Source of the DNA: Macrostomum lignano
Lineage: Eukaryota
Reading direction: 5' to 3'
DNA: 64,000 bases
Assembly: GCA_002269645.1 (NCBI GenBank)
Contig: NIVC01001809.1
Span: forward strand, 1-64,000
Shown: in pieces, positions 7,010 to 62,387 of the stretch
Numbering within the stretch: position 1 is the first letter of the stretch
How the letters are laid out: every line of letters starts with the position of its first letter
Made by a program: the position numbers and the translations under genes
Notes under the pieces: generated by a model
Seen by the model: the letters and a program-made list of their open reading frames with translations, nothing else
Databases searched by the model: none
What the model was told of the DNA's origin: nothing

Positions 7010-7770
7010 GACTCTAGATAACATCACCTGTGACTCTAGAAAATTACTACCTGTGACTAGACAATAGCACCTAAGACTCTAGATAACTACCACCTGTGAC
7101 TCTAGAAAATTACTACCTGTGACTAGACAATAGCACCTAAGACTCTAGATAACTACCACCTGTGACTTTAGATAATTACCACATGTGACTCTAGACAATA
7201 GCACTTAAGACTCTAGATAATTACCACCTGTGACTCTAGACAATAGCACTTAAGACTCTAGATAATTACCACCTGTGACTCTAGATAATTACCACATGTG
7301 ACTCTAGACAATAGCACCTAAGACTCTAGATAACTACCACCTGTGACTCTAGAAAATTACTACCTGTGACTAGACAATAGCACCTAAGACTCTAGATAAC
7401 TACCACCTGTGACTCTAGAAAATTACTACCTGTGACTAGACAATAGCACCTAAGACTCTAGATAACTACCACCTGTGACTTTAGATAATTACCACATGTG
7501 ACTCTAGACAATAGCACTTAAGACTCTAGATAATTACCACCTGTGACTCTAGACAATAGCACCTAAGACTCTAGATAACTACCACCTGTGACTTTAGATA
7601 ATTACCACATGTGACTCTAGACAATAGCACCTAAGACTCTAGATAACTACCACCTGTGACTCTAGATAATCACCACCTGTGACTCTAGATAATTACCACA
7701 CGTGACTCTAGACAATAGCACTTAAGACTCTAGATAATTACCACCTGTGACTGTTGATAATACCACCTGT
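7010..7770. repeat. Composite 22/23-bp minisatellite (GACTCTAGATAACTACCACCTGT / GACTCTAGACAATAGCACCTAA)
   Basis: Two alternating unit types share a GACTCTAGA core. Confidence 0.9.
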
Positions 7771-10755: not shown

Positions 10756-11784
10756 CTGAGTGGATGAATGTGTACAAATTGGGATACAGGTAGAGGTAGG
10801 GGCCTAGGCCAAGTCGCATACATATAAAAAAATATAAAATTATAAAAAAACATATACTAACATATTACTGCTATACTAGTATACAATTAGTATTGGTAGC
10901 ATAAGCAACTACTAATACTAGTAGTACATACACACACACTGTCAGTCAACTCAAAAGATTCAGTCAATTCAGACAACCAAAGTGGCTTGGCCTTGCTTCA
11001 AACCTTTCATAACCAGCTCATGCATTTAATCTTGAACAAGCTCTTTGCTAATCCATGAATAAATAAAATGCTTCAAGGCTTCAATAAAATGATACAATAT
11101 ATATTCTGTATTCTATTAGCTAAAATTTAGCTAAGTATATTGCTTCAATTTTGGGCCTATACTATATGATTCAGAGTGTGAAATCATAATCTTAATATTG
11201 TCTTGTCAGAAGTTTTTGTCTAGCACTATATTGCACCAATGCGGCACATCTTTAACCCCCTTTAAAAGCCATTTCAAAATCGTTGCTATGTCACTCTATA
11301 GTCCAGATCAAGCTGAATACACACTCAAACAAAAAATAAATAATTACAAATGCACACCAAAAAAAGTTGAGTTATTCTCAAATCTAGGTTGGTGTTACAT
11401 CAATAAAACATATTTTTGCATGTGAAAAAATGACCTTTTTGTGTTGCATCAATGACCCCTTTTTAGCTGATATTTTTTTATTTTCTTTGTTTTTTATCTA
11501 TTACAAATACTATTTATAGCTGAAAATTGATATACAAACTTTTGTTTGACTGCTTCACTATAGACTATTGTATGCCAATTTTTTTGGTATATAATATACC
11601 TTCCACAATATGGCATACCGTACAAGCAAATTTTTTTGATAGGAATAGTTCTGGTACACGGCGCCATCAAACATTTTTGATAGGATTTGTTCTAGCGCAG
11701 GTGTGCCATGCGTTATACCTGATCAGCACACCCGCACTAGAACAAATCCTTCTGGTGGATTTACACTGCCATCATCCACCCCTC

Positions 11785-34982: not shown

Positions 34983-35013
<31 letters not shown>

Positions 35014-38062: not shown

Positions 38063-39688
38063 AAGCTCCAAACTGTTTAGGGGCTGGGGCGCCACCCTTT
38101 TATCTTTTGCTCGCTATGCAAACGCTATTTTGCTACTGAAAAGTAGAGTAGATAATGCATTATTTGGGAGTGGCATCAAAGTTATTCTAGTATATGTGCT
38201 TTAGTATAAGAACAGCATGTTGATGTCATATCGTTAATAATAAAGCATATTTATGCTTGCAATCACAGATTTGTTCAAGTCAACTTTTGGCCCCGATGAG
38301 ATGCCAAAAGTTCAATTGATGCCTCCGCTTTTTTGAGTAGTATGTTGTGCTCCGTTTACAAAATGTAGCGCTGCTTGTTGATTACTTGACAGTTGCTGTT
38401 AACTTTGAAGGCATAGTTTCAATTTAATGTGTGCTGGTTTTTTATTTCACCTAACTTGTGGTTTTACTTATTGATAATTTAAACTGTCCTGCCGAACAAA
38501 CATTATGTAGGCAACTAGCAGACTAAAATTTAGAGAAAGAGTAGAAAAGATTCACATCCTGTTGTGCTTGCTCTGTTACTTTCACTTCACCATCACCTAA
38601 TTATCCTCTTTACTCTTCTGTGTTCCGTTTAATAAATATGCTAATTCCTCTCGTTTATTATTTAATAATTTGTGCTTGGTTTGTGTGAACTCTTCCTGAA
38701 ATTTGCAATAATAAATCTAAACTAAATTAATTTATTTGCACCCATACATACCGCTTGTGAGTAGTAAGCTCAGCGCAGGGAGGCTTTTTTCAGGCGCCAT
38801 CATATATAATAGGGTGCCATTGTCTGTTTACTACAGTGTACAGATGTGATTTGATTGGCTGTCTGTTTTGCTTGTCAGTAAGTGCATAGTGTGACCCCAA
38901 GTACGGCTTTGCGCTCTCGCTACGAGCCTATAAATACAAATTATTAATAAATTTGTCGCTTATACAATATGAATACCTTAGTAGTTGTTCTAAAATTACA
39001 GTCACACTCATAAAAAATTGAAATTTATTTCAGACTGTCTATTTATTGTCTTCTGTTTATTTCTTATTTATTATTCAGCCCCATGTATCCTGAGCACAGA
39101 CAAGCGCGCCAATACTGTACGCTAGGTGGCTACTAGATTATGGTCCTCCTGGGTGTGGATTATCGATAAATACGGAATCGAACCTCGGACTTGTTGGGCT
39201 CGAGAGTCGGGTGCATTTACCGCTCAGCTGCTCTGCCTCGTGCTTAGGCGGGGGAATGGCTTCCGTAATAAAGAACTTGATGATTGCCTGTACCTGTGCT
39301 CTGCTGTCCAGCTTCTCCATGACTGCTCAAAAGTGCTGTCGATCGTTGCATACATTTATCACCTGCAATGAAGAGCAGCGATTGAGCTCCTCCTCAAATG
39401 GATCCTCAAAACTAGAGAAAAAAGAGTTATTTCATTGCTCCGGTAGTCTTTCCTTAATAATTAGTAATAATTTAGTAGCTTATCTTAATACTCGTATAAA
39501 ATCGGCATTATTTTCCTGCTTTGTTTACTTGGTTCGGCACTTTGTTGAGCAGATAGAGACTCCAGCTACATGGCTACGGGCCAGGCTGGAGTGAAAAGGA
39601 GAGGGTGAGATGACGGATAAGAAGGAGAGGCAAAGAGATGGGATGTTGAAAAATATAGAAGAGGAGAGAGAGTAATGAAGATGCTAAG

Positions 39689-40742
39689 ATTCCAGTGACA
39701 CTAGTGCTCAGATTCCAGTGAAACTAGTTCTCAGATTCAATTGACACTAGTGCTCAGCTTCCAGTGAAACTCGTGCTCAGATTCCAGTGAACTAGTGCTC
39801 AGATTCAATTGACACTAGTGCTCAGATTCCAGTGAACTAGTGCTCAGATTCCAGTGAACTAGTGCTCAGATTCCAGTGAAACTAGTGCTCAGATTCCAGT
39901 GAAACTAGTTCTCAGATTCCAGTGAAACTAGTGCTCAGATTCCAGTGAAACTAGTTCTCAGATTCAATTGACACTAGTGCTCAGCTTCCAGTGACACTAG
40001 TGCTCAGATTCAATTGACACTAGTGCTCAGCTTCCAGTGAAACTCGTGCTCAGATTCAATTGACACTAGTGCTCAGATTCCAGTGAAACTCGTGCTCAGA
40101 TTCCAGTGAACTAGTGCTCAGATTCCAGTGAACTAGTGCTCAGATTCCAGTGAACTAGTGCTCAGATTCCAGTGAACTAGTGCTCAGATTCCAGTGACAC
40201 TAGTGCTCAGCTTCCAGTGAAACTAGTTCTCAGATTCAATTGACACTAGTGCTCAGCTTCCAGTGACACTAGTGCTCAGATTCAATTGACACTAGTGCTC
40301 AGCTTCCAGTGAAACTCGTGCTCAGATTCAATTGACACTAGTGCTCAGATTCCAGTGAACTAGTGCTCAGATTCCAGTGAAACTAGTGCTCAGATTCCAG
40401 TGAAACTAGTTCTCAGATTCCAGTGAAACTAGTGCTCAGATTCCAGTGAAACTAGTGCTCAGATTCCAGTGAAACTAGTTCTCAGATTCAATTGACACTA
40501 GTGCTCAGCTTCCAGTGACACTAGTGCTCAGATTCAATTGACACTAGTGCTCAGCTTCCAGTGAAACTCGTGCTCAGATTCAATTGACACTAGTGCTCAG
40601 ATTCCAGTGAAACTCGTGCTCAGATTCCAGTGAACTAGTGCTCAGATTCCAGTGAACTAGTGCTCAGATTCCAGTGAAACTAGTGCTCAGATTCCAGTGA
40701 AACTCGTGCTCAGTTTTCAGTGACACTAGTGCTCAGCTTCCA
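39689..40742. repeat. 22/23-bp minisatellite (ATTCCAGTGAAACTAGTGCTCAG)n
   Basis: About 46 units, with variants ATTCAATTGACACTAGTG and CTTCCAGTGAAACTCGTG. Confidence 0.95.
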
Positions 40743-44058: not shown

Positions 44059-47000
44059 ATGGGCCAAAATCAAAGCCGCCATCAGGCCTTCAGCACCGAC
44101 AACATCACGCCGACTGCTGCAACCCATGCAAACTTCTGCGACATCGTCCGAGCTACTCTACGTGCCGCATCTCAAAATCGCTTTGATGACGTCCAGTTTT
44201 TCGTATCACAAATCAATGACCAATCAAATAAAGAAGCCTGCTGCATCAAGGCTGCCGAAAAAGCTGCAATGAATGATCATTTTCAAATCGTCCAGTTTCT
44301 CGTACCGCTAATCAATGACCAATCAAATAAAGACGCCTGCTGCATCAGGGCTGCCGAAGAGGCTGCAATCCGTGGTTACTTTCAAATCGTCCAGTTCCTC
44401 GTACAACTAATTAATGACCAATCCAATAAAGACGCCTGCTGCATCAAGGCTGCAGAAAATGCTGCATTCATGGGTCACTTTCAAGCCGTCGAGTTCCTCG
44501 TACCACTAATCAATGACCAATCAAATAAAGAAGCCTGCTGCATCAAGGCTGCCGAAAAAGCTGCAATGAATGATCATTTTCAAATCGTCCAGTTTCTCGT
44601 ACCGCTAATCAATGACCAATCAAATAAAGACGCCTGCTGCATCAGGGCTGCCGAAGAGGCTGCAATCCGTGGTTACTTTCAAATCGTCCAGTTCCTCGTA
44701 CAACTAATTAATGACCAATCCAATAAAGACGCCTGCTGCATCAAGGCTGCAGAAAATGCTGCATTCATGGGTCACTTTCAAGCCGTCGAGTTCCTCGTAC
44801 CACTAATCAATGACCAATCAAATAAAGAAGCCTGCTGCATCAAGGCTGCCGAAAAAGCTGCAATGAATGATCATTTTCAAATCGTCCAGTTTCTCGTACC
44901 GCTAATCAATGACCAATCAAATAAAGACGCCTGCTGCATCAGGGCTGCCGAAGAGGCTGCAATCCGTGGTTACTTTCAAATCGTCCAGTTCCTCGTACAA
45001 CTAATTAATGACCAATCCAATAAAGACGCCTGCTGCATCAAGGCTGCAGAAAATGCTGCATTCATGGGTCACTTTCAAGCCGTCGAGTTCCTCGTACCAC
45101 TAATCAATGACCAATCAAATAAAGAAGCCTGCTGCATCAAGGCTGCCGAAAAAGCTGCAATGAATGATCATTTTCAAATCGTCCAGTTTCTCGTACCGCT
45201 AATCAATGACCAATCAAATAAAGACGCCTGCTGCATCAGGGCTGCCGAAGAGGCTGCAATCCGTGGTTACTTTCAAATCGTCCAGTTCCTCGTACAACTA
45301 ATTAATGACCAATCCAATAAAGACGCCTGCTGCATCAAGGCTGCAGAAAATGCTGCATTCATGGGTCACTTTCAAGCCGTCGAGTTCCTCGTACCACTAA
45401 TCAATGACCAATCAAACAGAGACGCCTTCTGCATCGAGGCTGCAGAAAAAGCTGCAGACAATGGTCACTTTCAAATCGTCCAGTTCCTTATCTCGTGTCT
45501 CTCTAGTTCCCATCAGAGAGAAAATCTCCGCTTCCAATGCGTACTCAAAGCTTGCTCTCGTCTGCGCGAAGATGCAGTTGCCTCCCTCGGCCTCGAGCCC
45601 AAATGGCTCTTCCAATCCACCACCATCCTCAGGTTCACTGCAGCAATGGCCATCGAAGGCAGGAACTCTGTTCTCACCGACACCCTCTCTCGAATGCAGC
45701 CAGCTCGCATCACACAGCTGCTCCGTCTCTCTATCACTCAAAGACACGTCGCTCTTGCTGTCACGCTGATCAATCATGAGCGAGTCAGCACACAGCTTGT
45801 CGATCTGCCAGACAGCACTGGAGCCACTGCTCTCATGCTGGCAGCTGATGCAGGTCATCACGAGCTCATTGAGAAACTCATCGATCTCGGTGCGTCAGTG
45901 CGTGCTGAAGACAGTCAGGGTCGGACTGCTCTGTCACGAGCGTGCGAAGCCGGTCACGTGCGAGCAGCCAAGGCTCTGATGGATGCAGGAGCGGATGCCA
46001 ACCATCGAGACAATCACGGCCTCACCTGTGCGCAACTCGCACAAAGATTCGACCAGCGGCAGGTGCTCCGCCTGCTGAATCCCACCGAGTCAGTTCCCAT
46101 TAATTGCCATTCCACTTCCTATCACTTCAATTCCTCACCTCGCTTTCATTCACACATTCCAGAAAACAACAGCACACCCACACAACCGCTCAAAGCCGCT
46201 CAATGTGAGTCTCATTCTCCTTGGCCCACTCTGCAAATATGCACTCTCACCTCTCCCACCCACCACGCTATCCTTCCAGACTCTCTGACAAAGAGCTGCA
46301 TCAACTGCTCAGCGATGCAGGATTCACCCAGCAGAGAGCAAAGTGTCAGCAAAACCTGGCTGACTGGCTACAAGAAGTCGCTCGAGTCCTCACACAGGAT
46401 CACAGGCGAATGACCGGCAGCTACGCAGAGGGCTGGGCAAACAGTCTGGTGCAAGTCAACGGCAGGACAGCTGCAGACTCCGACATTGACTGGACTGTGC
46501 TGGTTGCTGGGCAAATGTTCCATCTGGAAGGTGGCTGCGACAGAAAAGGTTCCTGCGGCTACGACACTCCGCTCAAGGTCAAGGAGGGCCACGCACAAGT
46601 GGCAGTCGGAGCAGGTCAGTGACGCTGCGCTCATCATCACAATGCCGCAATCCCCAATCCAAGCCCCCGTCAACTTTGCTCAATTTTTTATTCGATACCT
46701 GAACTTCAGAGCTCACAAGTTCAACCTGAGTTTGAGACCTGGCTGACATTCCTTTCAGGACTCATTTCGCTTTGAATAAAATTTCTGGCAAGCAATCACT
46801 CAACTAAAGTCCCAGCAATTGCACTGCCTCACCACCTCAGAGGTTATTAAACAATTATGAAGCAATGCCTTGCTTTCTCTTTGCCCTAAAATAATTTTTC
46901 TCTTTCTCCGCCCATCATCAACTCCATAGCGGTGCGCCTGCATGCATTTCAACGAATACTTTGCTTCATTCACTGATTGCAGTAGTAGCACTGACACACG

Positions 47001-48688
47001 AACTCAACCAACACATTCAAGCAGTTGCAAACCAATCCATCTTGTTCACTCGCCACACTGCCACTCTCCGCTCACTGCGCTCTACAGGCAGCCAACCTGC
47101 TGTGACAGCCACGGCGTGCGGTGTGCGGCCTGCACAGGACACGTGCCATGCGATCCACTGCTGCAGCAGCTTCTGTGTAGGCAGAGTTAGAAAACTAATT
47201 AAAAACGATAATTGTGTTCACCTCGTTCGCGCGACCAGACCGAGCTCGACCAACGAGCTCAGAGTGAGCTTCAGCTTCCAAGAGAAAGACATCATGAGAC
47301 GGCTGAGCACAGTCCAGGGCCAGCTGTTCACACTCATCAAGTTCATCTTCAAGAGACACTTGCCGCTCACTCTGGACACACCTGGACTCAAGACCTACCA
47401 TGCAAAGACTCTGCTCTTCGCAATGCTGGAGAGGTATGGCAAAAGTCCTGAAACTGAGGCTTGGCAGCCCCACAATCTGATCGCTCTGCTCAAGGAGTCG
47501 CTCGACATGATGCTTAAATTTATGAGGTCAAGGAGGTCGCCCAATGAGTGCATGCCGCACTTCTTCATGCCCGACGCTCCGCTCTACTTCAAGAACGCTG
47601 GAATCGGCGACGACTTCGACAACACGAAAGCGAGGGTTCGAGACCGACTTTGTGAGCTGAGAAGCGACATCGGCGGAGTGGTCGACCAGCTGAGAAAACA
47701 CGTGAGACCTCTGCAGTCAGAGAAGTTCTACTTTCACCCGTTCACTCTGCTTCCTCTAACAGCGCCGCCTGCTGTCACGAAGATCCGGGAAAGAAGTGAA
47801 TGTCCCAAAAAGTACTACAAGTTCGCAGATGTGTACAGTGTGGTGCACGAGTGTGTGAGCGAGCTGCAGTCGGAATCGAGCGACAGAAACACCCGGATGA
47901 GGCAGCTCAGTCTCCTGCATGAGCAGCAGTGGTGCAAGTGCGCCGCCCTGTGCATGACCGCCATGACGCATTTGAAGTTCGGAGAATCTGAGGAGGCTGA
48001 GAGACTCGCGATGGAGCTGCAGAGACATCAGCTTGAGTCAGGGTTGAAGCCGCAGAATATTCGAGATGAGAGTCGCAAATGGAGTTTGAGTGATATAAAA
48101 CTGCCAGAATACTCAGACTGGGCGTGGAGGTTCTGCCTCCCCTGCGACTCTCCGCCTCGCTTCCCATTCCTTCCCGAGTTCACGCAGACTCTGTTCACAG
48201 CCAGACTGTCGCAGCCTCTCTCCTCCCACCTGTACGTGAACTTCCGCTGCCTGAGCTGGAGTCTCCAAGCTGAGCTGCTTCGCAATCGCGCACCTGCAAT
48301 CGCATTCGATCATTGGATTGAACAGCTGCTTGGAGACCCGGACTTGGAGGAGCTGCTCACTCTGGCTCACTACAGCGACTGCCGCGAGCACGTGGAGCTC
48401 AGCCTGCAGCAGATGGAGATGATCGAGAAAGAGAGACGCGTCGCCATGGAGACGCAGGACGAGGAGAAGATCGTCTGGGTCAGGCAGAAGCGGTGGCGAG
48501 TTTCGAACCGCAGTGGCAGCGACAGCGGCGCTCACCGCAGCAGGGAAGATGAGGAGCGGAGGCTGTGGGCGAGGGCGAGGCTGCGGCGAGACGGGGCCGA
48601 TTTGGGTCGCCTGGTTGCCATGGAAACTGCAGCGGAGCAGAGAGACAGCTGGACTCACGCCAAGCTCAGTCGGATGAGACTGCAGTAA
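44059..48688 (+). CDS. Ankyrin-repeat / Mab-21 (cGAS-like receptor, cGLR) fusion protein, copy 1, 1321 aa
   Basis: join(44059..46088,46280..46614,47088..48688) = 3966 nt with canonical GT-AG introns and a continuous frame. Contains 13 x 33-aa AAxxGHxxIVxFL repeats and about 3 canonical ANK repeats (TALMLAADAGH, GRTALSRACEAGH). NTase motifs TGSYAEG...SDIDWTVLV and QDTCHAI; Mab-21 motifs HLV...LRVSFSFQEK, LKTYHAKTLLF, W...NL and PHFFMP. Confidence 0.88.
44215..45501 (+). repeat. Coding 99-bp ankyrin-like array, 13 units, organised as (ABC)x4 + D
   Basis: AAGAAGCC recurs at 44231, 44528, 44825 and 45122 (297-bp period). Confidence 0.95.
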
Positions 48689-49949: not shown

Positions 49950-50330
49950 CGCCACTGACTCACCTGTATTGGCGCCACTGACTCATCTGTATTGGTGCCA
50001 TGACTCATCTGTATTGGCGCCACTGACTCATCTGTATTGGCGCCACTGACTCATCTGTATTGGCGCCACTGACTCATCTGTATTGGCGCCACTGACTCAT
50101 CTGTATTGGCGCCACTGACTCATCTGTATTGGCGCCACTGACTCATCTGTATTGGCGCCACTGACTCATCTGTATTGGCGCCACTGACTCATCTGTATTG
50201 GCGCCACTGACTCATCTGTATTGGCGCCACTGACTCATCTGTATTGGCGCCACTGACTCATCTGTATTGGCGCCACTGACTCATCTGTATTGGCGCCACT
50301 GACTCATCTGTATTGGCGCCACTGACTCAT
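49950..50330. repeat. 23-bp tandem repeat (CGCCACTGACTCATCTGTATTGG)n, ~16 copies
   Basis: Nearly perfect units. Confidence 0.95.
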
Positions 50331-51072: not shown

Positions 51073-51304
51073 CTTTGGTGCCAGAACAAAAATCGGTCTG
51101 TCAGAAACTGCAGTCGAAATTTCTCCGGTCCGGTTTCACAGCTTTGCCAAAGTAACTTCCCAACCCTGTTAATTTCAACTAAACCAGATACCAAGTTTTA
51201 CTTTTAGCTTTTCTGAAAGTCATGCAAACAGACTGCTGGGCATGGGGGGCGCGGCTGACAGATTTGAATTCTGGCTGGCTGCTTGCGTTTTTATCGATGA
51301 GTGA

Positions 51305-51620
51305 TCTAGGGGTATCTATGGGTAATCTAGGGGATCTCTATGGGTAATCTAGGGGTATCTATGGGTAATCTAGGGGTATCTATGGGTAATCTAGGGGTAT
51401 CTATGGGTAATCTAGGGGTATCTATGGCTAATCTAGGGTATCTATGGGTAATCTAGGGGTATCTATGGGTAATCTAGGGGTATCTATGGCTAATCTAGGG
51501 GTATCTATGGGTAATCTAGGGGTATCTATGGCTAATCTAGGGTATCTATGGGTAATCTAGGGGTATCTATGGGTAATCTAGGGGTATCTATGGCTAATCT
51601 AGGGGTATCTATGGAATCTA
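51305..51620. repeat. 21-bp minisatellite (GGGGTATCTATGGGTAATCTA)n
   Basis: About 15 units. Confidence 0.95.
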
Positions 51621-52370: not shown

Positions 52371-53056
52371 AACCACAGTGCATGCAAATTTTCGCGTGAG
52401 GCAGACACGTTTCGGCTGAGCTGCCCAGCCTCTCAATTGCAGTCTCGGGCTTCATCAGTTGTTTATCATTAAAGTACAGCCGAGCTCTGGCAGCCCATCT
52501 CTGTTCTATCCAGCTCTCGGCCACAGCAATGCACTGCATTTTGCATTCCTGCTAACAATGGTTGATAGCAATGGCTTATTTATGATAGAATAAGGCAGTC
52601 TTGAGCCGTAGGGAGCGGGTGGGTAGAGAGGCCAGCTCAAACTCAAGCAGCAATTATCTCTGCTCGCTCGCTATTCTCAGGCCAGCGCACCGCTCTGCCA
52701 GCCTCCCTGCGGTTTAGAGGCGAGCTCTGTCCAGGCTTTGCGGTTGCCAGGGGCAACCTACTCTGTTTTGAGTAGTGAGCTGGATGGAGCTTCATACTAG
52801 TTGGACTTGTTAATTGTCTGAGACAGGGGTTACGGGGGGTTTGGGTGGTTGGAGAGGCCAGTATGGGGCGATTACGAACTCAAGCACTTTTCTTTTTGCA
52901 GCTGCGCGTACTGAGCTGGGTGGGGCCATTCCAGATGAAGGTCAGAGACTGCGAAAACATTTTCGGTGCTTTTCTTTTGCAACTTTGCCCCAGGAGCAGC
53001 TCTTCTTCGGGTGCAGTGGCTGCAGCGGAGGGTCAGGACAAGATTTTGGAGCTGCA

Positions 53057-54367
53057 GGGATGGTGACTGTAGGGATGGTGACTGTAGAGATGGTGACTGT
53101 AGGGAGGGTGACTGTAGGGATGGTGATTGTAGGGATGGTGACTGTAGGGATGGTGACTGTAGGGATGGTGACTGTAGGGATAGTGACTGTAGGGATGGTG
53201 ACTGTAGGGATGGTGACTGTAGGGATGGTGACTGTAGGGATGGTGACTGTAGGGATGGTGACTGTAGGGATGGTGACTGTAGGGATGGTGACTGTAGAGA
53301 TGGGACTGTAGGGATGGTGACTGTAGGGATGGTGACTGTAGGGATGGTGACTGTAGGGAGGGTGACTGTAGGGATTGTGATTGTAGGGATGGTGACTGTA
53401 GGGAGGGTGACTGTAGGGATTGTGATTGTAGGGATGGTGACTGTAGGGAGGGTGACTGTAGGGATTGTGATTGTAGGGATGGTGACTGTAGGGATGGTGA
53501 CTGTAGGGAGGGTGACTGTAGGGATTATGATTGTAGGGATGGTGACTGTAGGGAGGGTGACTGTAGGGATTGTGATTGTAGGGATGGTGACTGTAGGGAT
53601 GGTGACTGTAGGGAGGGTGACTGTAGGGATTGTGATTGTAGGGATGGTGACTGTAGGGATGGTGACTGTAGGGAGGGTGACTGTAGGGATTGTGACTGTA
53701 GGGATGGTGACTGTAGGGAGGGTGACTGTAGGGATTGTGATTGTAGGGATGGTGACTGTAGGGAGGGTGACTGTAGGGATTGTGATTGTAGGGATTGTGA
53801 CTGTAGGGATGGTGACTGTAGGGAGGGTGACTGTAGGGATTGTGACTGTAGGGATGGTGACTGTAGGGATGGTGACTGTAGGGATAGTGACTGTAGGGAG
53901 GGTGACTGTAGGGATTGTGATTGTAGGGATGGTGACTGTAGGGAGGGTGACTGTAGGGATTGTGATTGTAGGGATGGTGACTGTAGGGATGGTGACTGTA
54001 GGGAGGGTGACTGTAGGGATTGTGACTGTAGGGATGGTGACTGTAGGGAGGGTGACTGTAGGGATTGTGATTGTAGGGATGGTGACTGTAGGGAGGGTGA
54101 CTGTAGGGATTGTGATTGTAGGGATTGTGACTGTAGGGATGGTGACTGTAGGGAGGGTGACTGTAGGGATTGTGACTGTAGGGATGGTGACTGTAGGGAG
54201 GGTGACTGTAGGGATTGTGATTGTAGGGATGGTGACTGTAGGGATGGTGATTGTAGGGATGGTGACTGTAGGGATGGTGACTGTAGGGAGGGTGACTGTA
54301 GGGATGGTGACTGTAGGGATGGTGACTGTAGGGATGGTGACTGTAGGGATGGTGACTGTAGGGATGG
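53057..54367. repeat. 15-bp G-rich minisatellite (GGGATGGTGACTGTA)n, ~87 units
   Basis: Variants GGGAGGG/GGGATTG and GACT/GATT, plus one 14-bp unit near 53300; source of the long TIPTV/QSPSL ORFs. Confidence 0.97.
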
Positions 54368-55339
54368 TTTCATTAATCCAATCGTCACTGCAAGTTTCCG
54401 CCTGCGCTTGCAAGCCAAATCTCGCCACAGGGGCCGGTTGCCACCTGCTAAAAAATAAAACAGAAGGAGCGGCAGTGATGAGAGGCTTCTGCAGAAAAGC
54501 AAAAGAATGTCAATTACTGCTGCTAAATGCACTCGCCTAATTCAACCCAGCAGATTCTCAACTGCCTGAGCTGCGCACGAGAGGAAAAAGGCGAAAGCAT
54601 AGGAGAGTCGGGAGAGAACCAGAGCACTGTTGCCAGCCAATGCTCTGCAGCTGCGGCAGTGGGCAGAGTGAGAGAGAAAGCAGGGCAAATTTAACAATGC
54701 ATCTTCTTGCACATTAGAGAGCCTCCTCAAACCGATGCACTGCGGGACTGAGCAGCATTTTACACCGCTCAGTGGGCCGTTAAATGCATTTAAAGATCTC
54801 ACACTGCACTGAGGCACAATGGGTCTTTCTGGCAACCGGCTGCGCAAACCTTTGACTGACATCTGCCACACTGACAGCAGCCACGGATCATAGGTAGGAC
54901 TCATGAAGATTTTTAAAATTCCTTATAAAAATTTTTACAGCCACAAAGCAGCCCCCTTGCTCTCTCATTCGCTCTCCTTTTCTTCCTCTCTTTAAAAAAC
55001 ACTCCCTCCTCTCTCCCTCCCTCCCCTCCTTCTCATCTCCCTCCCTCCTCTCTCCCTCCCTCCCCTCCGTCTCCTCCTTCCTCCCTCCCCTCCTTCTCAC
55101 TCCCTCCCCTCCTTCTCCCTCCCTCCCCTTCTACTCCCTCTCTCCCTCCTTCTTCCCTCTTTCCTTTTCCTCTCTCCTTCCCCCTTCCTTTCTCCTTCCC
55201 CTCCTTTTCCCTTTCTCCTTTTCCCTCCCTCCTTCTCCCTCCCTCCTCCTCCCTCCCTCCCTCCTTTTCCCTCTTTCCTTCCCTCCTTGTTAACCTTGTT
55301 AACCTTGTTAACCTCTTCCTTGCTTCCCTTAACAGAACT

Positions 55340-58300
55340 ATGGCCCAGAATCCAAGCCGCCATCAGCCCCTCACCACCGACAACATCACGCCAACTGCTC
55401 GACGTGCTGCAACCAATGGCACCTTGCGCGAGATCGTCCAAGCTACTCTAACTGCTGCATCAAATGATCGCCTTCAAGATGTCCAGTTCCTCGTACCAGT
55501 AATCAATGGCCAATCAAATAAAGACGCCTGCTGCATCAAAGCTGCCGAAAAGGCTGCATTACGAGGTCACTTTCAAATCGTCGAGTTCCTCGTACCACTA
55601 ATCAATGACCAATCAAAAAAAGACGCCTGCTACATCAAGGCGGCCGAAATTGCTGCAATCCGTGGTCACTTTCTAATCGTCGAGTTCCTCGTACCGCTAA
55701 TCAATGACCAATCAAAAAAAGACGCCTGCTGCATCAAAGCGGCCGAAAATGCTGCAATGAATGGTCACTTTCAAATCGTCGAGTTCCTCGTACCACTAAT
55801 CAATGACCAATCAAAAAAAGACGCCTGCTACATCAAGGCGGCCGAAATTGCTGCAATAAATGGTCACTTTCTAATCGTCGAGTTCCTCGTACCACTAATC
55901 AATGACCAATCAAATAAAGACGCCTGCTGCATCAAGGCTGCCGAAAAGGCTGCAATGAATGGTCACTTTCAAATCGTCGAGTTCCTCGTACCACTAATCA
56001 ATGACCAATCAAAAAAGAAGCCTGCTGCATCTACGCTGCCGAAAAGGCTGCTTACGATGGTCACTTTAAAGCCGTCGAGTTCCTCGTACCACTAATCAAT
56101 GACCAATCAAATAAAGACGCCTGCTGCATCAAGGCTGCCGAAAATGCTGCGATGAATGGTCACTTTCAAATCGTCGAGTTCTTCGTACCACTAATCAATG
56201 ACCAATCAAAAAAAGAAGCCTGCTGCATCTACGCTGCCGAAATGGCTGCTTACGATGGTCACTTTAAAGCCGTCGAGTTCCTCGTACCACTAATCAATGA
56301 CCAATCAAATAAAGACGCCTGCTGCATCAAGGCTGCCCAAAAAGCTGCAATCAGTGGTCACTTTCAAATCGTCGAGTTCCTCGTACCACTAATCAATGAC
56401 CAATCAAATAAAGACGCCTGCTGCATCAAGGCTGCCCAAAAAGCTGCAATCAGTGGTCACTTTCAAATCGTCGAGTTCCTCGTACCACTAATCAATGACC
56501 AATCAAATAAAGACGCCTGCTGCATCTACGCTGCCGAAATTGCTGCAATGAATGGTCACTTTCAAATCGTCGAGTTCCTCGTACCACTAATCAATGACCA
56601 ATCAAAAAAAGAAGCCTGCTGCATCTACGCTGCCGAAAAGGCTGCTTACGATGGTCACTTTAAAGCCGTCGAGTTCCTCGTACCACTAATCAATGACCAA
56701 TCAAAAAAAGACGCCTTCTGCATCAAGGCTACCGAAGAGGCTGCAGAATATGGTCACTTTCACATCGTCAAGTTCCTCGTACCACTAATCAATGACCAAT
56801 CAAAAAAAGACGGCTGCTGCATCAAAGCTGCCGAAAAGGCTGCATTCCGAGGTCACTTTCAAATCGTCGAGTTCCTCGTACCACTAATCAATGACCAATC
56901 AAAAAAAGACGCCTTCTGCATCAAAGCTGCCGAAAAGGCTGCATTCCGAGGTCACTTTCAAATCGTCGAGTTCCTCGTACCACTAATCAATGACCAATCA
57001 AAAAAAGACGCCTGCTGCATCTACGCTGCCGAAAAGGCTGCAAAATATGGTCACTTAAAAGCCGTCGAGTTCCTCGTACCACTAATCAATGACCAATCAA
57101 AAAAAGACGCCTTCTGCATCAAGGCTACCGAAGAGGCTGCAGAATATGGTCACTTTCAAATCGTCGAGTTCCTCATACCACTAATCAATGAACAATCAAA
57201 TAAAGACGCCTGCTGCATCAAAGCTGCCGAAAAGGCTGCAATGAATGGTCACTTTAAAGCCGTCGAGTTCCTCGTACCACTAATCAATGACCAATCAAAA
57301 AAAGACGCCTTCTGCATCAAGGCTACCGAAGAGGCTGCAAAATATGGTCACTTTAAAATCGTCGAGTTCCTCGTACCACTAATCAATGACCAATCAAATA
57401 AAGACGCCTGCTGCATCAAAGCTGCCGAAGAGGCTGCATTCCGATGTCACTTTCAAATCGTCGAGTTCCTCGTACCACTAATCAATGACCAATCAAAAAA
57501 AGACGCCTGCTGCATCTACGCTGCCGAAAAGGCTGCATTCCGAGGTCACTTTAAAGCCGTCGAGTTCCTCGTACCACTAATCAATGACCAATCAAATAAA
57601 GACGCCTGCTGCATCAAAGCGGCCGAAATTGCTGCAAGAAATCGTCACTTTCAAATCGTCGAGTTCCTCGTACCACTGATCAATGACCAATCAAAAAAAG
57701 ACGACTGCTTCATCTGGCCTGCCGAAACGGCTGCTTACGATGGTCACTTTAAAGCCGTCGAGTTCCTCGTACCACTAATCAATGACCAATCAAAAAAAGA
57801 CGCCTGCTGCATCAAGGCTACCGAAGAGGCTGCAGAGTATGGTCACTTTCACATCGTCAAGTTCCTCGTACCACTAATCAATGACCAATCAAAAAAATAC
57901 AACTGCTGCATCAAAGTTGCCGAAAAAGCTGCAGACGATGGTCATATTCACATTGTTCAGTTCCTTATCTCGTGTCTCTCTACTCCCCATCAGAGAGCAA
58001 ATCTCCGCTTCCAATGCGTACTCAATGCCTGCTCTCGTCTTGATGAATCTGTCGTTGCCTACTTCGGCCTAAAGCCTCAATGGCTCTTCCAATACAACAC
58101 CATCCTCAACTTCACTGCTAGCATGGCTATCCAAAACCGGAACTCTCTTCTCAACACCGCCCTCTCTCAAATGACACCACCTCAAATCACACACCTCCTC
58201 CGTCTCTCCATCTCTCAATCACACGTCGCTCTTGCCGCCACACTCCTCAATCATCACCTATTCAGCACACCACGTCGATCTACCGTCCATATCGATCTAA

Positions 58301-61300
58301 CAGAGGAAAACACCCGAGCCACCGCTCTCATCCTCGCTGCTCATGCTGGTCATCACGAAATCATTCACAAACTCATACTACTCGGCGCCTCCATCCACGC
58401 TCAAGACAACCACGGTCGCACTGCTCTCTCACGAGCCTGCCAAGCCGGTCACGTGCGAGCAGCCAAGACTCTGATGGATGCAGGAGCCGATGCCAATCAT
58501 CGAGACAATCACGGCCTCACCTGTGCGCAACTCGCACAGAGATTCGACCAGCGGCAGGTGCTCCGCCTGCTAAATCCCACCGAGTCAGTTCCCATTAATT
58601 GCCATTCCACTTCCTATCACTTCAATTCCTCACCTCGCTTCCATTCACACATTCCAGAAAACAACAGCACACCCACACAACCGCTCAAAGCCGCTCAATG
58701 TGAGTCTCACTCTCCTTGGTCCACTCTGCAAATATGCACTCTCACCTCTCCCACCCACCACGCTATCCTTCCAGACTCTCTGACAAAGAGCTGCATCAAC
58801 TGCTCAGCGATGCGGGATTCACCCAGCAGAGAGCAGAGTGTCAGCAAAACCTGGCTGACTGGCTACAAGAAGTCGCTCGAGTCCTCACACAGGATCACAG
58901 GCGAATGACCGGCAGCTACGCAGAGGGCTGGGCCAACAGTCTGGTGCAAGTCAACGGCAGGACAGCTGCAGACTCCGACATTAACTGGACTGTGCTGGTT
59001 GCTATGCGAGAGTTCCATCTGGAAAGTGCCTGTGATCGAACAGATTCCTGCAGCAACGACACTGTCAACGACAATGATTCCTGCAGCAACGACACTGTCA
59101 ACGACAATGATTCCTGCAAAGACGCCCCTCGGCTGCAGGTTACGGAGGGGCACGCACAGGTGGCAGTCGGAGCAGGTCAGTGACGCTCCGCTCATCATCA
59201 CAATGCCGACATCCCCAGTCTAAGCCTGCGTCAACTTTTAAAGTCTCAAATTCAAATTTTCAAATTTTTATTCAATACCTGAACTTCAGAGCTCACAAGT
59301 TTAACCAGAGTTTTAGACCTGACTCAAATACCTTTCGGCACTCAGTCTGCTCTGAATAAAAACTCCTGAAACCAATCAGACAACTCAAGCCCCAGCAATT
59401 GCACTGTGTGATAAATAGGCAATTAGATAATAGCATGCACGGTGAGCAATTATTTAGGCCCTAGACAAACCTACTTGGAGCGTTCGGAGATTTTAAAGCT
59501 ATTAATCCTAATCGCCTATCGCCGGTCGGCGAGTTCTACCAGTCTTCTCCAATAGCCGCAGATACAGTACAAGAAAATAAAGAACACGAGGGAACACAAA
59601 CCGAAAGATTTAGAGAGTGATAATCCTATTTCAAGAATAACTAACTTGATTGACGGTTTAATTTGATTAGCTGAGTTACAAGATTTAGACAAACGACGCA
59701 GATAACTAGAGTTGACAAAACGACAATAACGGTTAATAAATAATGATTATATACGCACTGACAAGCGGATCTCAGCTGAAGAAGAAAGAGGCACCGAACA
59801 CAGGACCACGGAGAAGACTCCTAACCCCTGGCCTAAGCCAGAACCTACTCTCAAACGAGAGCCCTGCCGAACCGACCGTTCAACGGAGTACCGACTAAGT
59901 TCTATCGGCACTGCCCTTCAGTGTAACACTGGGGCCCTCGGGGTCGAGGCCGCGTACTTGATCAGATCCGACAGTCTCTATCTAACCGCGCTTGATAGCG
60001 ACGACTTCAGACAGGAATTTGCCGTAGACGTTACGCCACAAGACTACTGCGGTTGGGCGGGAACAAAGATATGGACCGGGGGTGATGAAATCAAAACGCC
60101 TCAAAGCGCGAACCAACAAGGGGAGGAAAATCGGGCCACCGGCCGGGAACTGGACAAGACAAAACCGGGGAAAGGAGAGAAGCGAGATCCGATTGCCAAA
60201 ACACACTTTCATATATAGTCAGAGTCAAACCCTCACAAAACCCCCCTCAAGCCGGGTGGTGGTCGTCTGGCCGGCCGCTTGCTTAAGCCGAATTGAACTG
60301 TGCCCGCGGCGCCGGGTAGAACTGAAACTTGCCGCGTGCCAGGGTCCAGGCCGGTTCTGATTGGCTGACCGCGCAAAGCTGGGGTTCGCAGACACTCTCA
60401 ACCCTCCGCTGAGTCACAGATGGCGTCTGATTTCTAGCCTGTTTACAAATTTAGATTCTAACTAACAAGGAAAAAAAAGTACACCAAAAACGTATGACTA
60501 ACTAAAGCAAAATAACAATTCAATAACAATATAGAAACTAATGCAGTCAATTTACAACAAAATAAACGCAAGAGGTTATGAAACAATCACCGCCTCAGAG
60601 GTTATGAAACAATTATTAGGCAATGCCTTGCTTTCTCTTTCCCCTTAAAATAATTTTTCTCTGTCTCCGCCCATCATCAACTTCATAACGGTGCGCCTGC
60701 ATGCATTTCAACGAATACTTTGCTTCATTCACTGATTGCAGTAGTAGCACTGACACACGAACTCAACCAACTCATTCAAGCAGTTGAAAACCAACCCATC
60801 TTGTTCATTCCCCACAATGCCACTCTCCGCTCACTTCGCTCTACAGGCAGCCAACCTGCAGTGACAGCCACGCCGTGCGGTGTGCGGCCTGCACAGGACA
60901 CATGCCATGCGATCGAGTGGGGCAGTTTCGGCGAGGACAGAATTGAAAAACTGCTTCCTGGTGCTCGTAATTATTACTGGAATTCTGTTGACCTCGTTCG
61001 GGCGACCAGACCGAGCTCGACCAACGAGCTCAGAGTGAGCTTTAGCATCCAAGAGAAAGAGATCATGAGACGGCTGAGCACAGTCCAGGGCCAGCTGTTC
61101 ACACTCATCAAGTTCATCTTCAAGAGACACTTGCCGCTCACTCTGGACACACCTGGACTCAAGACCTACCATGCAAAGACTCTGCTATTCTTCCTGCTGG
61201 AGAAGCATGGCACAGATCCTGAAACTGAGGCTTGGCAGCCCCACAATCTGATCGCTCTGCTCAAGGAGTCTCTTGACATGATGCTGAGCTTCATCGACTC

Positions 61301-62387
61301 GAGCAGCTCGCCGGATGAGTGCATGCCGCACTTCTTCATGCCCGACGCTCAGCTCTACTTCAAGAACGCTGGAATCGGCGGCGACTTCGACAACACGAAA
61401 GCGAGGGTTCGAGACCGACTTTGTGAGCTGAGAAGCGACATCGGCGGAGTGGTCGACCAGCTGAGAAAACACGTGAGACCTCTGCAGTCAGAGAAGTTCT
61501 ACTTTCACCCGTTCACTCTGCTTCCTCTAACAGCGCCGCCTGCTGTCACGAAGATCAGGGAAGGAACTGATAGCAAATACCTTATTAGAGATCGGGCGAT
61601 CAGGGAAGTAATGGGGTGCTTTGATTTCTACGAGTACTACAAGTTCGCGGACGTGTACTGTGTGGTGCACCAGTGTGTGAGCGAGCTGCAGTCGGAATCG
61701 AGCGACAGAGACACCCTGATGAGGCAGCTCAGTCTCCTGAATCATCATCGGCTGCAGTGGTGCAAGTGCGCCGCCCTGTGCATGACCGCCATGGCGCATT
61801 TGAAGTTCGGAGAATCTAAGAAGGCTGAGAGACTCGCGATTGAGCTGCAGACACATCAGGTCGAGTCAGGGTTAATGCTAAGGGAAATTCAAGTGGGATA
61901 TTGCCAAACTAAATTGCCGGAAAACTCAGACTGGGCGTGGAGGTTCTGCCTCCCCTGCGACTCTCCGCCTCGCTTCCCATTCCTTCCCGAGTTCACGCAG
62001 ACTCTGTTCACAGCCAGACTGTCGCAGCCTCTCTCCTCCCACCTGTACGTGAACTTCCGCTGCCTGAGCTGGAGTCTCCAAGCTGAGCTGCTCCGCAATC
62101 GCGCACCTGCAATTAAACTGGAGGATTGGAAGCGGGAGCTGGAAGAAGACCCGGACTTGGAGGAGCTGCTCACTCTGGCTCACTACAGCGACTGCCGCGA
62201 GCACGTGGAGCTCAGCCTGCAGCAGATGGAGATGATCGAGAAAGAGAGACGCGTCGCCATGGAGACGCAGGACGAGGAGAAGATCGGCTGGGTCAGGCAG
62301 AAGCTGGAGAGACTTGATTCAGCAGCCGGAGTCCTCAAAGCCTCGTCGCAAAGTCGAGGTCGGAAAAGGAAGGCCGAGTCAGACTGA
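55340..62387 (+). CDS. Ankyrin-repeat / Mab-21 (cGLR) fusion protein, copy 2, ~1728 aa if the frameshift is corrected (possible pseudogene or assembly error)
   Basis: join(55340..58583,58775..59175,60847..62387) with the same splice sites and phases as copy 1. 25 x 33-aa repeats; a -1 frameshift in the A-run at 56011..56016; SDIN instead of SDID. Confidence 0.8.
55505..57978 (+). repeat. Coding 99-bp ankyrin-like array, 25 mosaic units
   Basis: Scaffold NDQSxKxAxxIxAxExAAxxGHFxxVxFLVPLI. Confidence 0.95.
59407..60586. mobile_element. ~1.2-kb insertion in intron 2 of cGLR copy 2, possibly an LTR-retroelement fragment
   Basis: Absent from the 473-bp intron of copy 1. Homology breaks after GCACTG (59406) and resumes at TCACCGCCTCAGAGG (~60587). 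Starts with TG; TGTAACA followed by CTGGGGCC near 59923..59937 could be an LTR end plus PBS. The insertion is certain, its identity is not. Confidence 0.5.

What the first reader, a model, noticed from the sequence alone, without database searches (positions are those of the whole stretch)
55505..57978. DARPin-like hypervariable code in a 25-unit ankyrin array
Seen: units are nearly identical in DNA, including synonymous sites (CTC GTA CCA CTA ATC AAT GAC CAA TCA in almost every unit). Variation is concentrated at unit positions 12 (K/Y/W), 16 (K/I/N/M/E/T) and the 19-20 dipeptide, which takes 11 forms: LR, IR, MN, IN, YD, IS, EY, FR, KY, RN, DD. 5' half-types (NKDACCIK, KKEACCIY, KKDAFCIKATEE) combine with 3' half-types (GHFQIV, GHFKAV, GHFHIV) in mosaic fashion. 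Established: the AA-x-x-GH dipeptide corresponds to ankyrin positions 13-14, ligand-facing residues randomised in DARPins. Inference: concerted homogenisation of the scaffold plus diversifying selection and unit shuffling yields a natural binder repertoire, analogous to TALE RVDs or VLR cassettes.
Basis: partly seen in the sequence, partly recalled or inferred. Interest (0 to 1): 0.82.

Follow-up and report, generated by a model that had tools for sequence, protein, structure and literature searches.

The report
Hypervariable ankyrin array, flatworm cGAS-like gene
A flatworm (Macrostomum lignano) gene for a cGAS-like immune-type enzyme starts with 25 almost identical 33-residue ankyrin-type modules that differ mainly on one helix face, the same design seen in fungal immune receptors, although this particular copy looks enzymatically dead and perhaps broken.

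Summary
At 55511-57984 (+) lie 25 tandem 99-bp coding units, 89% identical in DNA, with a roughly 45-bp scaffold block that is nearly invariant even at silent sites. There are 11 dipeptide forms at the AA-xx-GH position.

Unit 6 has a 1-bp deletion that breaks the frame. The array is exon 1 of a Macrostomum lignano ankyrin-cGLR (cGAS/Mab21-like) gene. A paralog with a 13-unit array lies upstream in the same window.

Five other homogenised arrays of this large, apparently M. lignano-specific family vary at the same ankyrin positions (13, 14, 10, 6). These lie on one face of helix 1.

Amino-acid divergence at those codons is 9-12 times the silent divergence of the other codons. Conventional dN/dS is only about 1-1.7, and silent changes also cluster there. 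Gene conversion between the two paralogs is evident.

Best reading: a concertedly evolving, diversity-retaining sensor solenoid like the ANK/TPR/WD repeats of fungal NLRs, here fused to a cGLR. Binding and selection are inferred. VLR-like assembly is not supported.

This copy has DSDID changed to DSDIN and has lost a conserved Cys cluster. It is a new variant of a known kind.

The parts
55340..58583 (+). Exon 1 of the target gene: ATG, leader, cap unit, 25-unit array, helical linker and canonical ANK repeats. Donor GT at 58584.
   Evidence: ORFs. Gene model built by comparison with P0030 and splice-site reading. With one A restored, the spliced CDS is 5229 nt and encodes 1742 aa with no internal stop.
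55424..55522 (+). Degenerate N-terminal cap unit (LREIVQATLTAASNDRLQDVQFLVPVINGQSNK).
   Evidence: Weak match (23.6 bits) to the unit HMM, in register with the array.
55511..57984 (+). Array of 25 tandem 33-codon ankyrin-type units (24 of 99 bp, one of 98 bp). Unit 25 is a diverged C-terminal cap.
   Evidence: Pfam Ank_2 E 1e-75. Gap-free alignment to DARPins. AF2 pLDDT 91.9 and Foldseek matches to ANK solenoids.
56011..56016 (+). A6 homopolymer in unit 6, where the 15 other Lys-Lys units have A7. The 1-bp deletion shifts the frame.
   Evidence: Unit spacing of 98 bp; sequence. Whether it is real or an assembly error cannot be told.
57985..58317 (+). All-helical linker between the array and the canonical ankyrin repeats; conserved in the family.
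   Evidence: AF2 secondary structure; family alignment.
58318..58581 (+). Canonical ankyrin repeats (8-residue helix, 9-residue helix, 14-residue loop), not homogenised.
   Evidence: Pfam Ank/Ank_2 best stretches at residues 726-807 of the ORF; model.
58658..58699 (+). Exon 2. Introns at 58584-57657 is wrong; correct introns are 58584-58657 and 58700-58774.
   Evidence: GT/AG sites and agreement with the P0030 peptide KQQHTHTTAQSRSI.
58775..59175 (+). Exon 3: N-terminal part of the cGAS/Mab21-like nucleotidyltransferase core.
   Evidence: Family model matches cGAS, MAB21L1 and Sp-cGLR1.
58905..58988 (+). Active-site stretch MTGSYAEGW...DSDINW. The second catalytic acid is Asn (AAC, 58983-58985), where most scanned relatives, including paralog 1, have DSDIDW.
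   Evidence: Motif definition from Li et al. 2023 (PMC9980059).
59043..59118 (+). 33-bp x 2.3 perfect tandem duplication inside exon 3, adding DSCSNDTVNDN repeats. Absent from the relatives examined.
   Evidence: 100% matches; translation; family sequences.
60847..62387 (+). Exon 4: rest of the cGLR-like domain (Pfam Mab-21_C) and C-terminal helical region; stop codon at 62385-62387. Intron 3 is 59176-60846.
60903..60932 (+). CHAIEWGSFG, where the family has CHAIxCCSSFC. Three conserved cysteines of a Cys/His cluster are lost.
44059..46088 (+). Paralog 1, exon 1 (intact ORF). It matches P0030 (UniProt A0A1I8GUK9 of M. lignano) apart from the array length. End coordinate approximate.
44221..45507 (+). 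Paralog 1 array: 13 units, made of four identical copies of a 297-bp three-unit block plus a cap unit.
   Evidence: P0030 has only two copies of the block.
47088..48688 (+). Paralog 1, last exon (cGLR-like domain). Its active-site stretch MTGS...DSDIDW lies at 46410-46493. Start coordinate approximate.

Best explanation
The array is the N-terminal, sensor-type domain of a Macrostomum lignano ankyrin-cGLR gene. It belongs to a very large family that, as far as sampled, is confined to this species. The family architecture is a 33-residue repeat array, a helical linker, canonical ANK repeats, and a cGAS/Mab21-like nucleotidyltransferase.

Shown:
- The units are ankyrin-derived helix-turn-helix modules, predicted to stack into a solenoid.
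- The arrays change by duplication of units and multi-unit blocks.
- Reticulate exchange occurs within arrays and between paralogs. It keeps a roughly 45-bp scaffold block identical even at silent sites.
- Amino-acid diversity sits at the same positions in six arrays: ANK positions 13, 14, 10 and 6, with 18/19 as well in this array. On a helical wheel these cluster on one side of helix 1.

Inferred:
- That face is the ligand-facing groove.
- Diversity there is kept or generated by selection while the rest of the unit is homogenised, so each gene offers a different long binding surface.
- Ligand binding controls the cGLR-like domain.

This particular copy has probably lost enzymatic signalling: Asp to Asn in the catalytic dyad, and a lost Cys cluster. 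If the 1-bp deletion in unit 6 is real, it is a young pseudogene; otherwise it may be a non-catalytic variant.
For: Organism and family:
- All close hits are M. lignano proteins with ANK plus Mab-21_C.
- An ANK-free profile finds 66 cluster representatives at E<=1e-30. The seven of these looked up by name were all M. lignano.
- Distant hits carry Pfam Mab-21 and Mab-21_C.
- The model of the enzyme part matches cGAS (E 6.8e-7, TM 0.52), MAB21L1 and Sp-cGLR1.
- Relatives are listed as ANK-bearing cGLRs by Li et al. 2023.

Solenoid:
- Pfam ANK.
- Gap-free alignment to DARPins, E 3.6e-39.
- AF2 pLDDT 91.9, with matches to DARPins and ankyrin-R.

Homogenisation and exchange:
- Array-specific scaffolds.
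- Consensus units of the two arrays differ at 3 of 99 nt, against 71-88% identity in the flanks.
- 98-100% identical blocks spanning introns.
- Four perfect copies of a 297-bp block in paralog 1.
- 103 of 300 site pairs incompatible.

Hypervariable face:
- Extra residue states summed over six arrays: 20, 19, 13 and 8 at positions 13, 14, 10 and 6; zero at positions 5, 20 and 22.
- Helical-wheel variability moment 0.44-0.49, p about 0.04.
- dN at the hypervariable codons is 0.66 against dS 0.073 at linked codons, a ratio of 9.0 with bootstrap range 6.4-14.4.
- With the codon set chosen from the other five arrays the ratio is 12.5, and only 5 of 20000 random sets reach the observed pN.

Lesions of this copy.

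Precedent for the mechanism in fungal NLRs: PMC4986451.
Against: - Conventional dN/dS is not clearly above 1. It is 1.52 for all codons and 1.74 for the hypervariable codons. A count of minimal events gives 1.11.
- Five of ten minimal silent events fall in the six hypervariable codons.
- Near-identical unit pairs differ by 23 non-synonymous to 7 synonymous changes, close to neutral.
- The whole family evolves fast: omega is 0.42-0.79 in the unique regions.
- No model coordinates were available, so exposure of the variable residues rests on alignment and a helical wheel.
- DARPin-randomised positions 5 and 33 are invariant here.
- There are no expression, population or binding data.
- The copy-number difference against P0030 may be an assembly collapse.
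- The frameshift and the active-site loss allow this copy to be non-functional.
Confidence: 0.55

Rival explanations
1. Neutral by-product. The array is a coding minisatellite in a genome that is prone to tandem repeats. Structural positions are held by purifying selection and, being similar, are further homogenised by identity-dependent conversion and unequal exchange. Unconstrained surface positions simply drift and locally block conversion. No selection for diversity acts, and there is no receptor repertoire.
For: - dN/dS is about 1 within the hypervariable codons, silent changes are also enriched there, and recent differences are 23 non-synonymous to 7 synonymous.
- The window is full of minisatellites.
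- Paralog 1 expanded by pure block duplication with no diversification.
- The xx positions before GH are the ones left free in consensus ANK design.
Against: - Positions that vary freely between arrays (25, 26, 28, 32, 33) are invariant within this array, while 13, 14, 10 and 6 vary in all six arrays.
- Codons directly next to the dipeptide (GCT GCA and GGT CAC) are nearly invariant at silent sites. Conversion tracts would therefore have to stop within a few bases of it.
- dN at the hypervariable codons is 9-12 times the silent divergence of the other codons.
Confidence: 0.25
2. This copy is a recently dead pseudogene. Its large, diverse array reflects relaxed constraint and unchecked expansion, not function.
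For: - 1-bp deletion in unit 6.
- DSDID changed to DSDIN.
- CCSSFC changed to EWGSFG.
- A 33-bp duplication inside the enzyme domain.
- 19 private changes at 422 columns that are otherwise invariant, or 4.5%, against 1-2.9% in nine relatives.
Against: - Only one frame-breaking lesion in 5.2 kb, located in a homopolymer where assembly errors are common.
- Arrays in the older public assembly carry many such errors.
- The target branch shows no excess of non-synonymous change in exon 4: 30 N to 15 S, against 61.5 to 20.5 in the intact paralog.
- Variation in the array is not uniform, as decay would predict.
- The same pattern occurs in other arrays.
Confidence: 0.35
3. A TALE-like one-unit-one-monomer code, or VLR-like somatic cassette assembly.
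For: Near-identical units with a hypervariable dipeptide. A long regular solenoid is predicted.
Against: - Variation is not confined to the dipeptide; positions 6, 10, 18, 19 and others also vary.
- No orphan unit cassettes lie outside the two arrays in the window, and both arrays sit in otherwise complete gene models.
- Nothing in the data speaks to somatic change or a polymer ligand.
Confidence: 0.05
4. Assembly artefact: the array is mis-assembled or artificially expanded.
For: The public Mlig_3_7 contigs show 28-29-unit arrays in which more than half the units are off length. P0030 has 7 units where the window has 13.
Against: Here 24 of 25 and 13 of 13 units are exactly 99 bp. In the target array 22 of 24 unit sequences are distinct, which anchors their order. 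The array is only 2.5 kb long, within single long reads.
Confidence: 0.05

Closest known systems
ANK, TPR and WD repeat domains with high internal conservation in fungal NOD-like receptors (Paoletti et al. 2007; Dyrka et al. 2014, PMC4986451)
   Same: - Near-identical tandem repeats.
- Exchange within and between paralogs.
- A few hypervariable positions per repeat on the inner helices.
- Attachment to an innate-immune-type signalling domain.
- A large lineage-specific family.
   Different: - Animal host. Dyrka et al. found such repeats in only 0.8% of metazoan ANK/TPR/WD proteins.
- The repeats are N-terminal and fused to a cGAS-like nucleotidyltransferase, not to a NACHT or NB-ARC domain.
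- Positive selection and repeat-number polymorphism are not demonstrated here.
- The unit lacks the beta-hairpin.
ANK-fused cGAS-like receptors catalogued by Li et al. 2023 (PMC9980059)
   Same: Same architecture class. M. lignano PAA accessions of this kind appear in their domain table with Ank_2, and five M. lignano proteins were cloned for their screen.
   Different: That paper does not describe homogenised arrays or hypervariable positions. The target gene fails their active-site motif. No activity is reported for the flatworm proteins in the text I could read.
DARPins (designed ankyrin repeat proteins)
   Same: 33-residue consensus-like units that align without gaps. The hypervariable dipeptide equals randomised positions 13-14.
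   Different: Randomised positions 5 and 33 are invariant here, and positions 2 and 3 vary only slightly. Positions 6 and 10 vary instead. The predicted unit has a 17-18-residue first helix and no beta-turn, and carries a conserved Cys-Cys at positions 3-4.
TALE repeats with repeat-variable diresidues
   Same: Tandem near-identical units, a hypervariable dipeptide, and evolution by unit recombination.
   Different: Different fold. Variation is not restricted to the dipeptide. There is no evidence for a per-unit code or for nucleic-acid binding.
Lamprey variable lymphocyte receptors
   Same: Repeat-based diversity in a receptor-like protein.
   Different: No incomplete germline gene and no donor cassettes. 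The diversity seen here is germline diversity between units and paralogs.

Membership tests
Ankyrin repeat superfamily | 33-residue period with the AA-xx-GH...V..LL helix-turn-helix signature | tested here: met
   99-bp period. Pfam Ank_2 E 1.1e-75 and Ank_4 E 1.4e-56. Gap-free alignment to DARPins, E 3.6e-39.
Ankyrin repeat superfamily | Stacked solenoid of antiparallel helix pairs | tested here: met
   Prediction only. AF2 pLDDT 91.9. Foldseek hits to DARPins, and to ankyrin-R D34 with TM 0.56.
Ankyrin repeat superfamily | TPLH motif and a beta-hairpin or loop 'finger' between repeats | tested here: not met
   The sequence has D-A-C-C-I-K in place of G-x-T-P-L-H. In the model, helix 1 runs for 17-18 residues with only a 3-residue inter-unit loop, whereas the canonical repeats downstream have a 14-residue loop.
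cGAS-like receptor / Mab21 nucleotidyltransferase | cGAS/Mab21 fold (NTase core plus helical lobe) | tested here: met
   Tested on relative P0004 with the family alignment. Foldseek gives cGAS 4k9b E 6.8e-7, MAB21L1 5eom and Sp-cGLR1 8gjy. Pfam Mab-21_C on the window ORF. Profile hits carry Mab-21 and Mab-21_C.
cGAS-like receptor / Mab21 nucleotidyltransferase | Active-site motif h[QT]GS-X8-20-[DE]h[DE]h (criterion of Li et al. 2023) | tested here: not met
   The target reads MTGS...DSDINW. Paralog 1 and six of the seven other family proteins scanned read ...DSDIDW and meet the motif.
cGAS-like receptor / Mab21 nucleotidyltransferase | Third catalytic acid, h[DE]h, 50-90 residues downstream | tested here: inconclusive
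   The regular expression gives no match at a conserved place in the family. A Cys-rich insertion alters the spacing. Structural superposition was not possible without coordinates.
cGAS-like receptor / Mab21 nucleotidyltransferase | Ligand-activated synthesis of a nucleotide second messenger | not testable with these tools
   Needs biochemistry.
Highly internally conserved hypervariable repeat domains (fungal NLR type) | Repeats at least about 85% identical over at least 100 residues | tested here: inconclusive
   Mean pairwise identity is 80% (amino acid) and 89% (nucleotide), and 86% to the consensus, over 792 residues. This is close to the threshold, and the measure differs from theirs.
Highly internally conserved hypervariable repeat domains (fungal NLR type) | Concerted evolution: exchange within and between paralogous arrays | tested here: met
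Highly internally conserved hypervariable repeat domains (fungal NLR type) | Positive selection at a few positions on the binding surface | tested here: inconclusive
   The positions recur in six arrays and lie on one helix face. dN at the hypervariable codons is 9-12 times dS elsewhere. Within-codon omega is 1-1.7 and the ratio for recent changes is near neutral. No HyPhy or PARRIS was available.
Highly internally conserved hypervariable repeat domains (fungal NLR type) | Repeat-number polymorphism between individuals | tested here: inconclusive
   Paralog 1 has 13 units in the window and 7 in P0030. Assembly collapse cannot be excluded.
Highly internally conserved hypervariable repeat domains (fungal NLR type) | Association with a NOD (NACHT or NB-ARC) domain | tested here: not met
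   No NOD domain is found. The partner is a cGLR-like domain.
DARPin-like variable surface | Variation at positions 13 and 14 | tested here: met
   8 and 5 residue types in this array (units 1-24). These are the top two positions across the six arrays.
DARPin-like variable surface | Variation at positions 2, 3, 5 and 33 | tested here: not met
   Positions 5 (Ile) and 33 (Lys) are invariant. Positions 2 and 3 have only rare variants.
TALE-type repeat code | Variation essentially confined to one dipeptide per repeat | tested here: not met
   Positions 6, 10, 18, 19, 32 and others also vary.
VLR-type somatic assembly | Incomplete germline gene flanked by donor cassettes | tested here: not met
   tblastn with the unit finds nothing outside the two arrays, and both arrays sit in otherwise complete gene models.

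The most novel reading that the evidence does not exclude
M. lignano has built a germline-diversified receptor family in which a recombining, hypervariable ankyrin solenoid recognises pathogen-derived or other non-self proteins and gates a cGAS-like signalling enzyme. This would be the animal counterpart of fungal NLR repeat diversification, using a cGLR instead of a NOD module, in a phylum reported to have lost Toll-like receptors (TLRs) and most cGLRs. Catalytically dead copies such as this one would act as decoys or regulators.
Probability: 0.2. Interest if true: 0.85.

Novelty: new variant of a known kind. Interest (0 to 1): 0.6.

Why it matters
All cGAS-like receptors characterised so far sense nucleic acids through the enzyme core itself. 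What the appended ANK or TPR domains of a minority of cGLRs do is unknown.

A family of dozens of cGLR-like genes whose ankyrin arrays evolve like fungal NLR sensor repeats points to protein-type or other non-nucleic-acid ligands. It would be an independent invention of repeat-shuffling receptor diversification in an animal.

M. lignano is transgenic and RNAi-tractable, so the idea can be tested.

The arrays are also a practical warning. The older public assembly garbles them, so the family is under-annotated.

Tried and rejected
- Exact look-ups of the two exon-1 ORFs of the window in public contigs found nothing. So there is no independent check of the frameshift or of expression.
- The public Mlig_3_7 loci of a relative (L001, L002) carry 28-29-unit arrays, but 16 of 27 and 17 of 29 units are off length, at different places in the two loci. 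I judged these to be assembly errors and used only the in-frame units.
- A PHI-like test for distance-dependent incompatibility inside the unit was not significant (p 0.26). Recombination and recurrent mutation therefore cannot be separated from the unit alone.
- Model coordinates are not exposed, so no solvent-accessibility map could be made. A helical-wheel test was used instead.
- Pfam does not detect the N-terminal NTase lobe. Fold search and profile search were needed.
- Literature searches for this flatworm family found only the listing by Li et al..
- I considered a zinc-thumb analogy for the Cys/His cluster and an N-myristoylation signal (MGQNQS in paralog 1, MAQNPS here). Both come from memory and were not tested.
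Full report
**What is there**

Tandem Repeats Finder reports a 99-bp period, 25.4 copies, 87% matches, at 55454-57965. Anchoring on CAATCAAA gives 25 units at 55511-57984. All are spaced by 99 bp except unit 6, which is 98 bp. Translation gives 33-residue units of consensus QSKKDACCIKAAEKAAMNGHFQIVEFLVPLIND.

Among units 1-24, mean identity is 89% in DNA and 80% in protein, and 22 sequences are distinct.
- The block VEFLVPLINDQS is nearly invariant, including at silent sites.
- The variable positions are K/Y/W, K/I/N/M/E/T, and the dipeptide before GH, which has exactly the 11 listed forms.
- Q/K/L/H and I/A at the start of the second helix also vary.

All 25 parsimony-informative nucleotide sites lie in codons 3-25.

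The ORF from 55340 therefore stops at 56095, and another ORF opens at 56152.

**Gene and organism**

Downstream ORFs carry canonical ankyrin repeats and Pfam Mab-21_C. All close database relatives are Macrostomum lignano proteins with ANK plus Mab-21_C.

A second gene of the same kind lies at 44059-48688 in the window. It matches M. lignano protein P0030 (UniProt A0A1I8GUK9) at 99.6% in its last exon. The window is therefore from this free-living flatworm.

Using P0030 as a guide, I read exons at 55340-58583, 58658-58699, 58775-59175 and 60847-62387. With one A restored, they encode 1742 residues without a stop.

The enzyme part of relative P0004 was modelled with the family alignment (pLDDT 78). 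It matches cGAS, MAB21L1 and the coral Sp-cGLR1.

An ANK-free profile finds 258 cluster representatives, 66 of them at E<=1e-30. The seven of these I looked up by name are all M. lignano. Distant hits are ordinary Mab-21 family proteins.

Li et al. 2023 list M. lignano accessions among ANK-bearing cGLRs and cloned five for their screen. They also note that most flatworms lack cGLRs.

**Structure of the unit**

The array aligns without gaps to DARPins. This puts the hypervariable dipeptide at ANK positions 13-14, two of the six positions randomised in DARPins.

The other variable sites are positions 6, 10, 18, 19 and 32, with 1-4 varying weakly. DARPin positions 5 and 33 are invariant.

The AF2 model of units 19-25 plus the tail has pLDDT 91.9 and matches ankyrin solenoids. 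Each array unit is predicted as a 17-18-residue helix, a 2-3-residue turn, a 10-residue helix and a 3-residue loop. It has no beta-hairpin. The canonical repeats downstream keep a 14-residue loop.

On a helical wheel, variability clusters on one side of helix 1 (moment 0.44-0.49, p about 0.04). The conserved Cys, Ala and Gly residues lie on the other side. I could not obtain coordinates, so exposure is inferred.

**Evolutionary mode**

- Paralog 1's array is four identical copies of a 297-bp three-unit block plus a cap. P0030 has two copies.
- Each homogenised array in the family has its own scaffold.
- The consensus units of the two arrays in the window differ at 3 of 99 nt, while the leader and tail are 71-88% identical.
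- The two genes share 98-100% identical stretches that run through introns, alternating with 60-75% blocks in the last exon.
- Within the target array, 103 of 300 informative site pairs fail the four-gamete test, and Rm is 3.

Concerted evolution with reticulate exchange is well supported.

**Selection**

Nei-Gojobori dN/dS among units:

| Codon set | dN/dS |
|---|---|
| All codons | 1.52 |
| Six most variable codons | 1.74 |
| Remaining codons | 0.90 |

Counting minimal events gives 42 non-synonymous and 10 synonymous changes, a ratio of 1.11. Five of the ten silent events fall in the six variable codons. Near-identical units differ by 23 non-synonymous and 7 synonymous codon changes.

For comparison, omega between paralogs in unique regions is 0.42-0.79.

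Two results argue against simple neutrality:
- dN at the variable codons (0.66) is 9 times the dS at linked codons (0.073; bootstrap range 6.4-14.4). It is 12.5 times the dS of all other codons when the codon set is defined from the other five arrays only.
- The same positions (13, 14, 10, 6) top the variability ranking across six arrays. Positions that differ freely between arrays (25, 26, 28, 33) are fixed within this array.

Codons immediately flanking the dipeptide are almost invariant at silent sites. That is hard to obtain from conversion tracts without selection against homogenising the dipeptide.

**State of this copy**

Besides the 1-bp deletion, the target shows these changes:
- It reads DSDINW, where most relatives scanned, including paralog 1, read DSDIDW. 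This is the position of the second catalytic acid in the motif of Li et al..
- It has lost three conserved cysteines (CCSSFC changed to EWGSFG).
- It carries a 33-bp tandem duplication in exon 3.
- It has 4.5% private changes at otherwise invariant columns, against 1-2.9% in relatives.

Its branch does not show an excess of non-synonymous change in exon 4. Homopolymer errors are frequent in arrays of the older assembly. I cannot decide between a young pseudogene and a non-catalytic variant with an assembly error.

**Comparison and verdict**

The closest described phenomenon is the ANK, TPR and WD repeats of fungal NLRs. These show high internal conservation, repeat-number polymorphism, exchange between paralogs, and positive selection on the concave face. 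The same paper finds such repeats in only 0.8% of metazoan repeat proteins.

Here the partner domain is a cGLR rather than a NOD module, the host is an animal, and the unit is a fingerless ANK variant. TALE and DARPin comparisons hold only for the dipeptide. VLR-like assembly is not supported.

I rate this a new variant of a known kind. The family-level pattern is solid. Binding function and diversifying selection are plausible but unproven. This particular gene is possibly defunct.

Noticed in passing
window 44221-45507: The array of paralog 1 is four identical copies of a 297-bp three-unit block plus a cap. The matching database protein P0030 has only two copies. This is either copy-number variation or collapse in the older assembly.
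   Followed up: partly
window 58450-59000 vs 45960-46500; 60847-62387 vs 47088-48688: The two paralogs are 93-100% identical from the end of exon 1 through introns 1-2 and exons 2-3. Exon 4 alternates 100% identical blocks with 60-75% blocks. This looks like mosaic gene conversion with hypervariable patches inside the cGLR-like domain.
   Followed up: partly
window 59043-59118: A perfect 33-bp x 2.3 tandem duplication inside the enzyme-coding exon 3 of the target adds DSCSNDTVNDN repeats. These are absent from the relatives examined.
   Followed up: partly
every unit of both arrays (ANK positions 3-4), e.g. window 55529-55534: A Cys-Cys pair replaces the G-x-T-P region of canonical ankyrin repeats. 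It is conserved across the whole family and gives a predicted ladder of paired cysteines along the solenoid. Its role is unknown.
   Followed up: no
window 47144-47176 (paralog 1) and 60903-60932 (target): The family has a conserved Cys/His cluster (C-H-x3-C-C-x3-C, with further cysteines upstream) inserted in the NTase core. From memory it is reminiscent of the cGAS zinc thumb. It is destroyed in the target.
   Followed up: no
window 44059-44079 vs 55340-55360: Paralog 1 (and P0036) start with MGQNQS, which from memory fits the N-myristoylation pattern. The target starts with MAQNPS and lacks the glycine.
   Followed up: no
L001 6070-8820 and L002 6679-9545 (GCA_002269645.1 contigs NIVC01001464.1, NIVC01002738.1): A relative (P0007/P0002) has 28-29-unit arrays in the public assembly. 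More than half the units are 92-100 bp instead of 99, at different places in the two loci. These are probably consensus errors that fragment the annotation.
   Followed up: partly
window 1-737, 7010-7770, 31762-32309, 39682-40742, 50001-50330, 51292-51614, 53052-54368: The window is dense with non-coding minisatellites of 15-37-bp period. Some are 100% identical (23 bp x 14.3 at 50001-50330; 15 bp x 88 at 53052-54368). This shows a genome prone to tandem-repeat expansion.
   Followed up: no
window 9944-10819 (-): An ORF with an NAD-dependent epimerase/dehydratase fold (Pfam E 1.4e-11). From memory it resembles the NDUFA9 subunit of complex I. It is unrelated to the finding.
   Followed up: partly
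window 33290-36307 (+): A 1005-residue ORF in a region of 57-67% G+C, rich in Gln, Ala, Gly and Arg/Ser runs, with no Pfam match. Two small Cys-rich single-pass membrane-type ORFs at 3507-4382 (-) and 6069-6863 (-) look like paralogs of each other.
   Followed up: no
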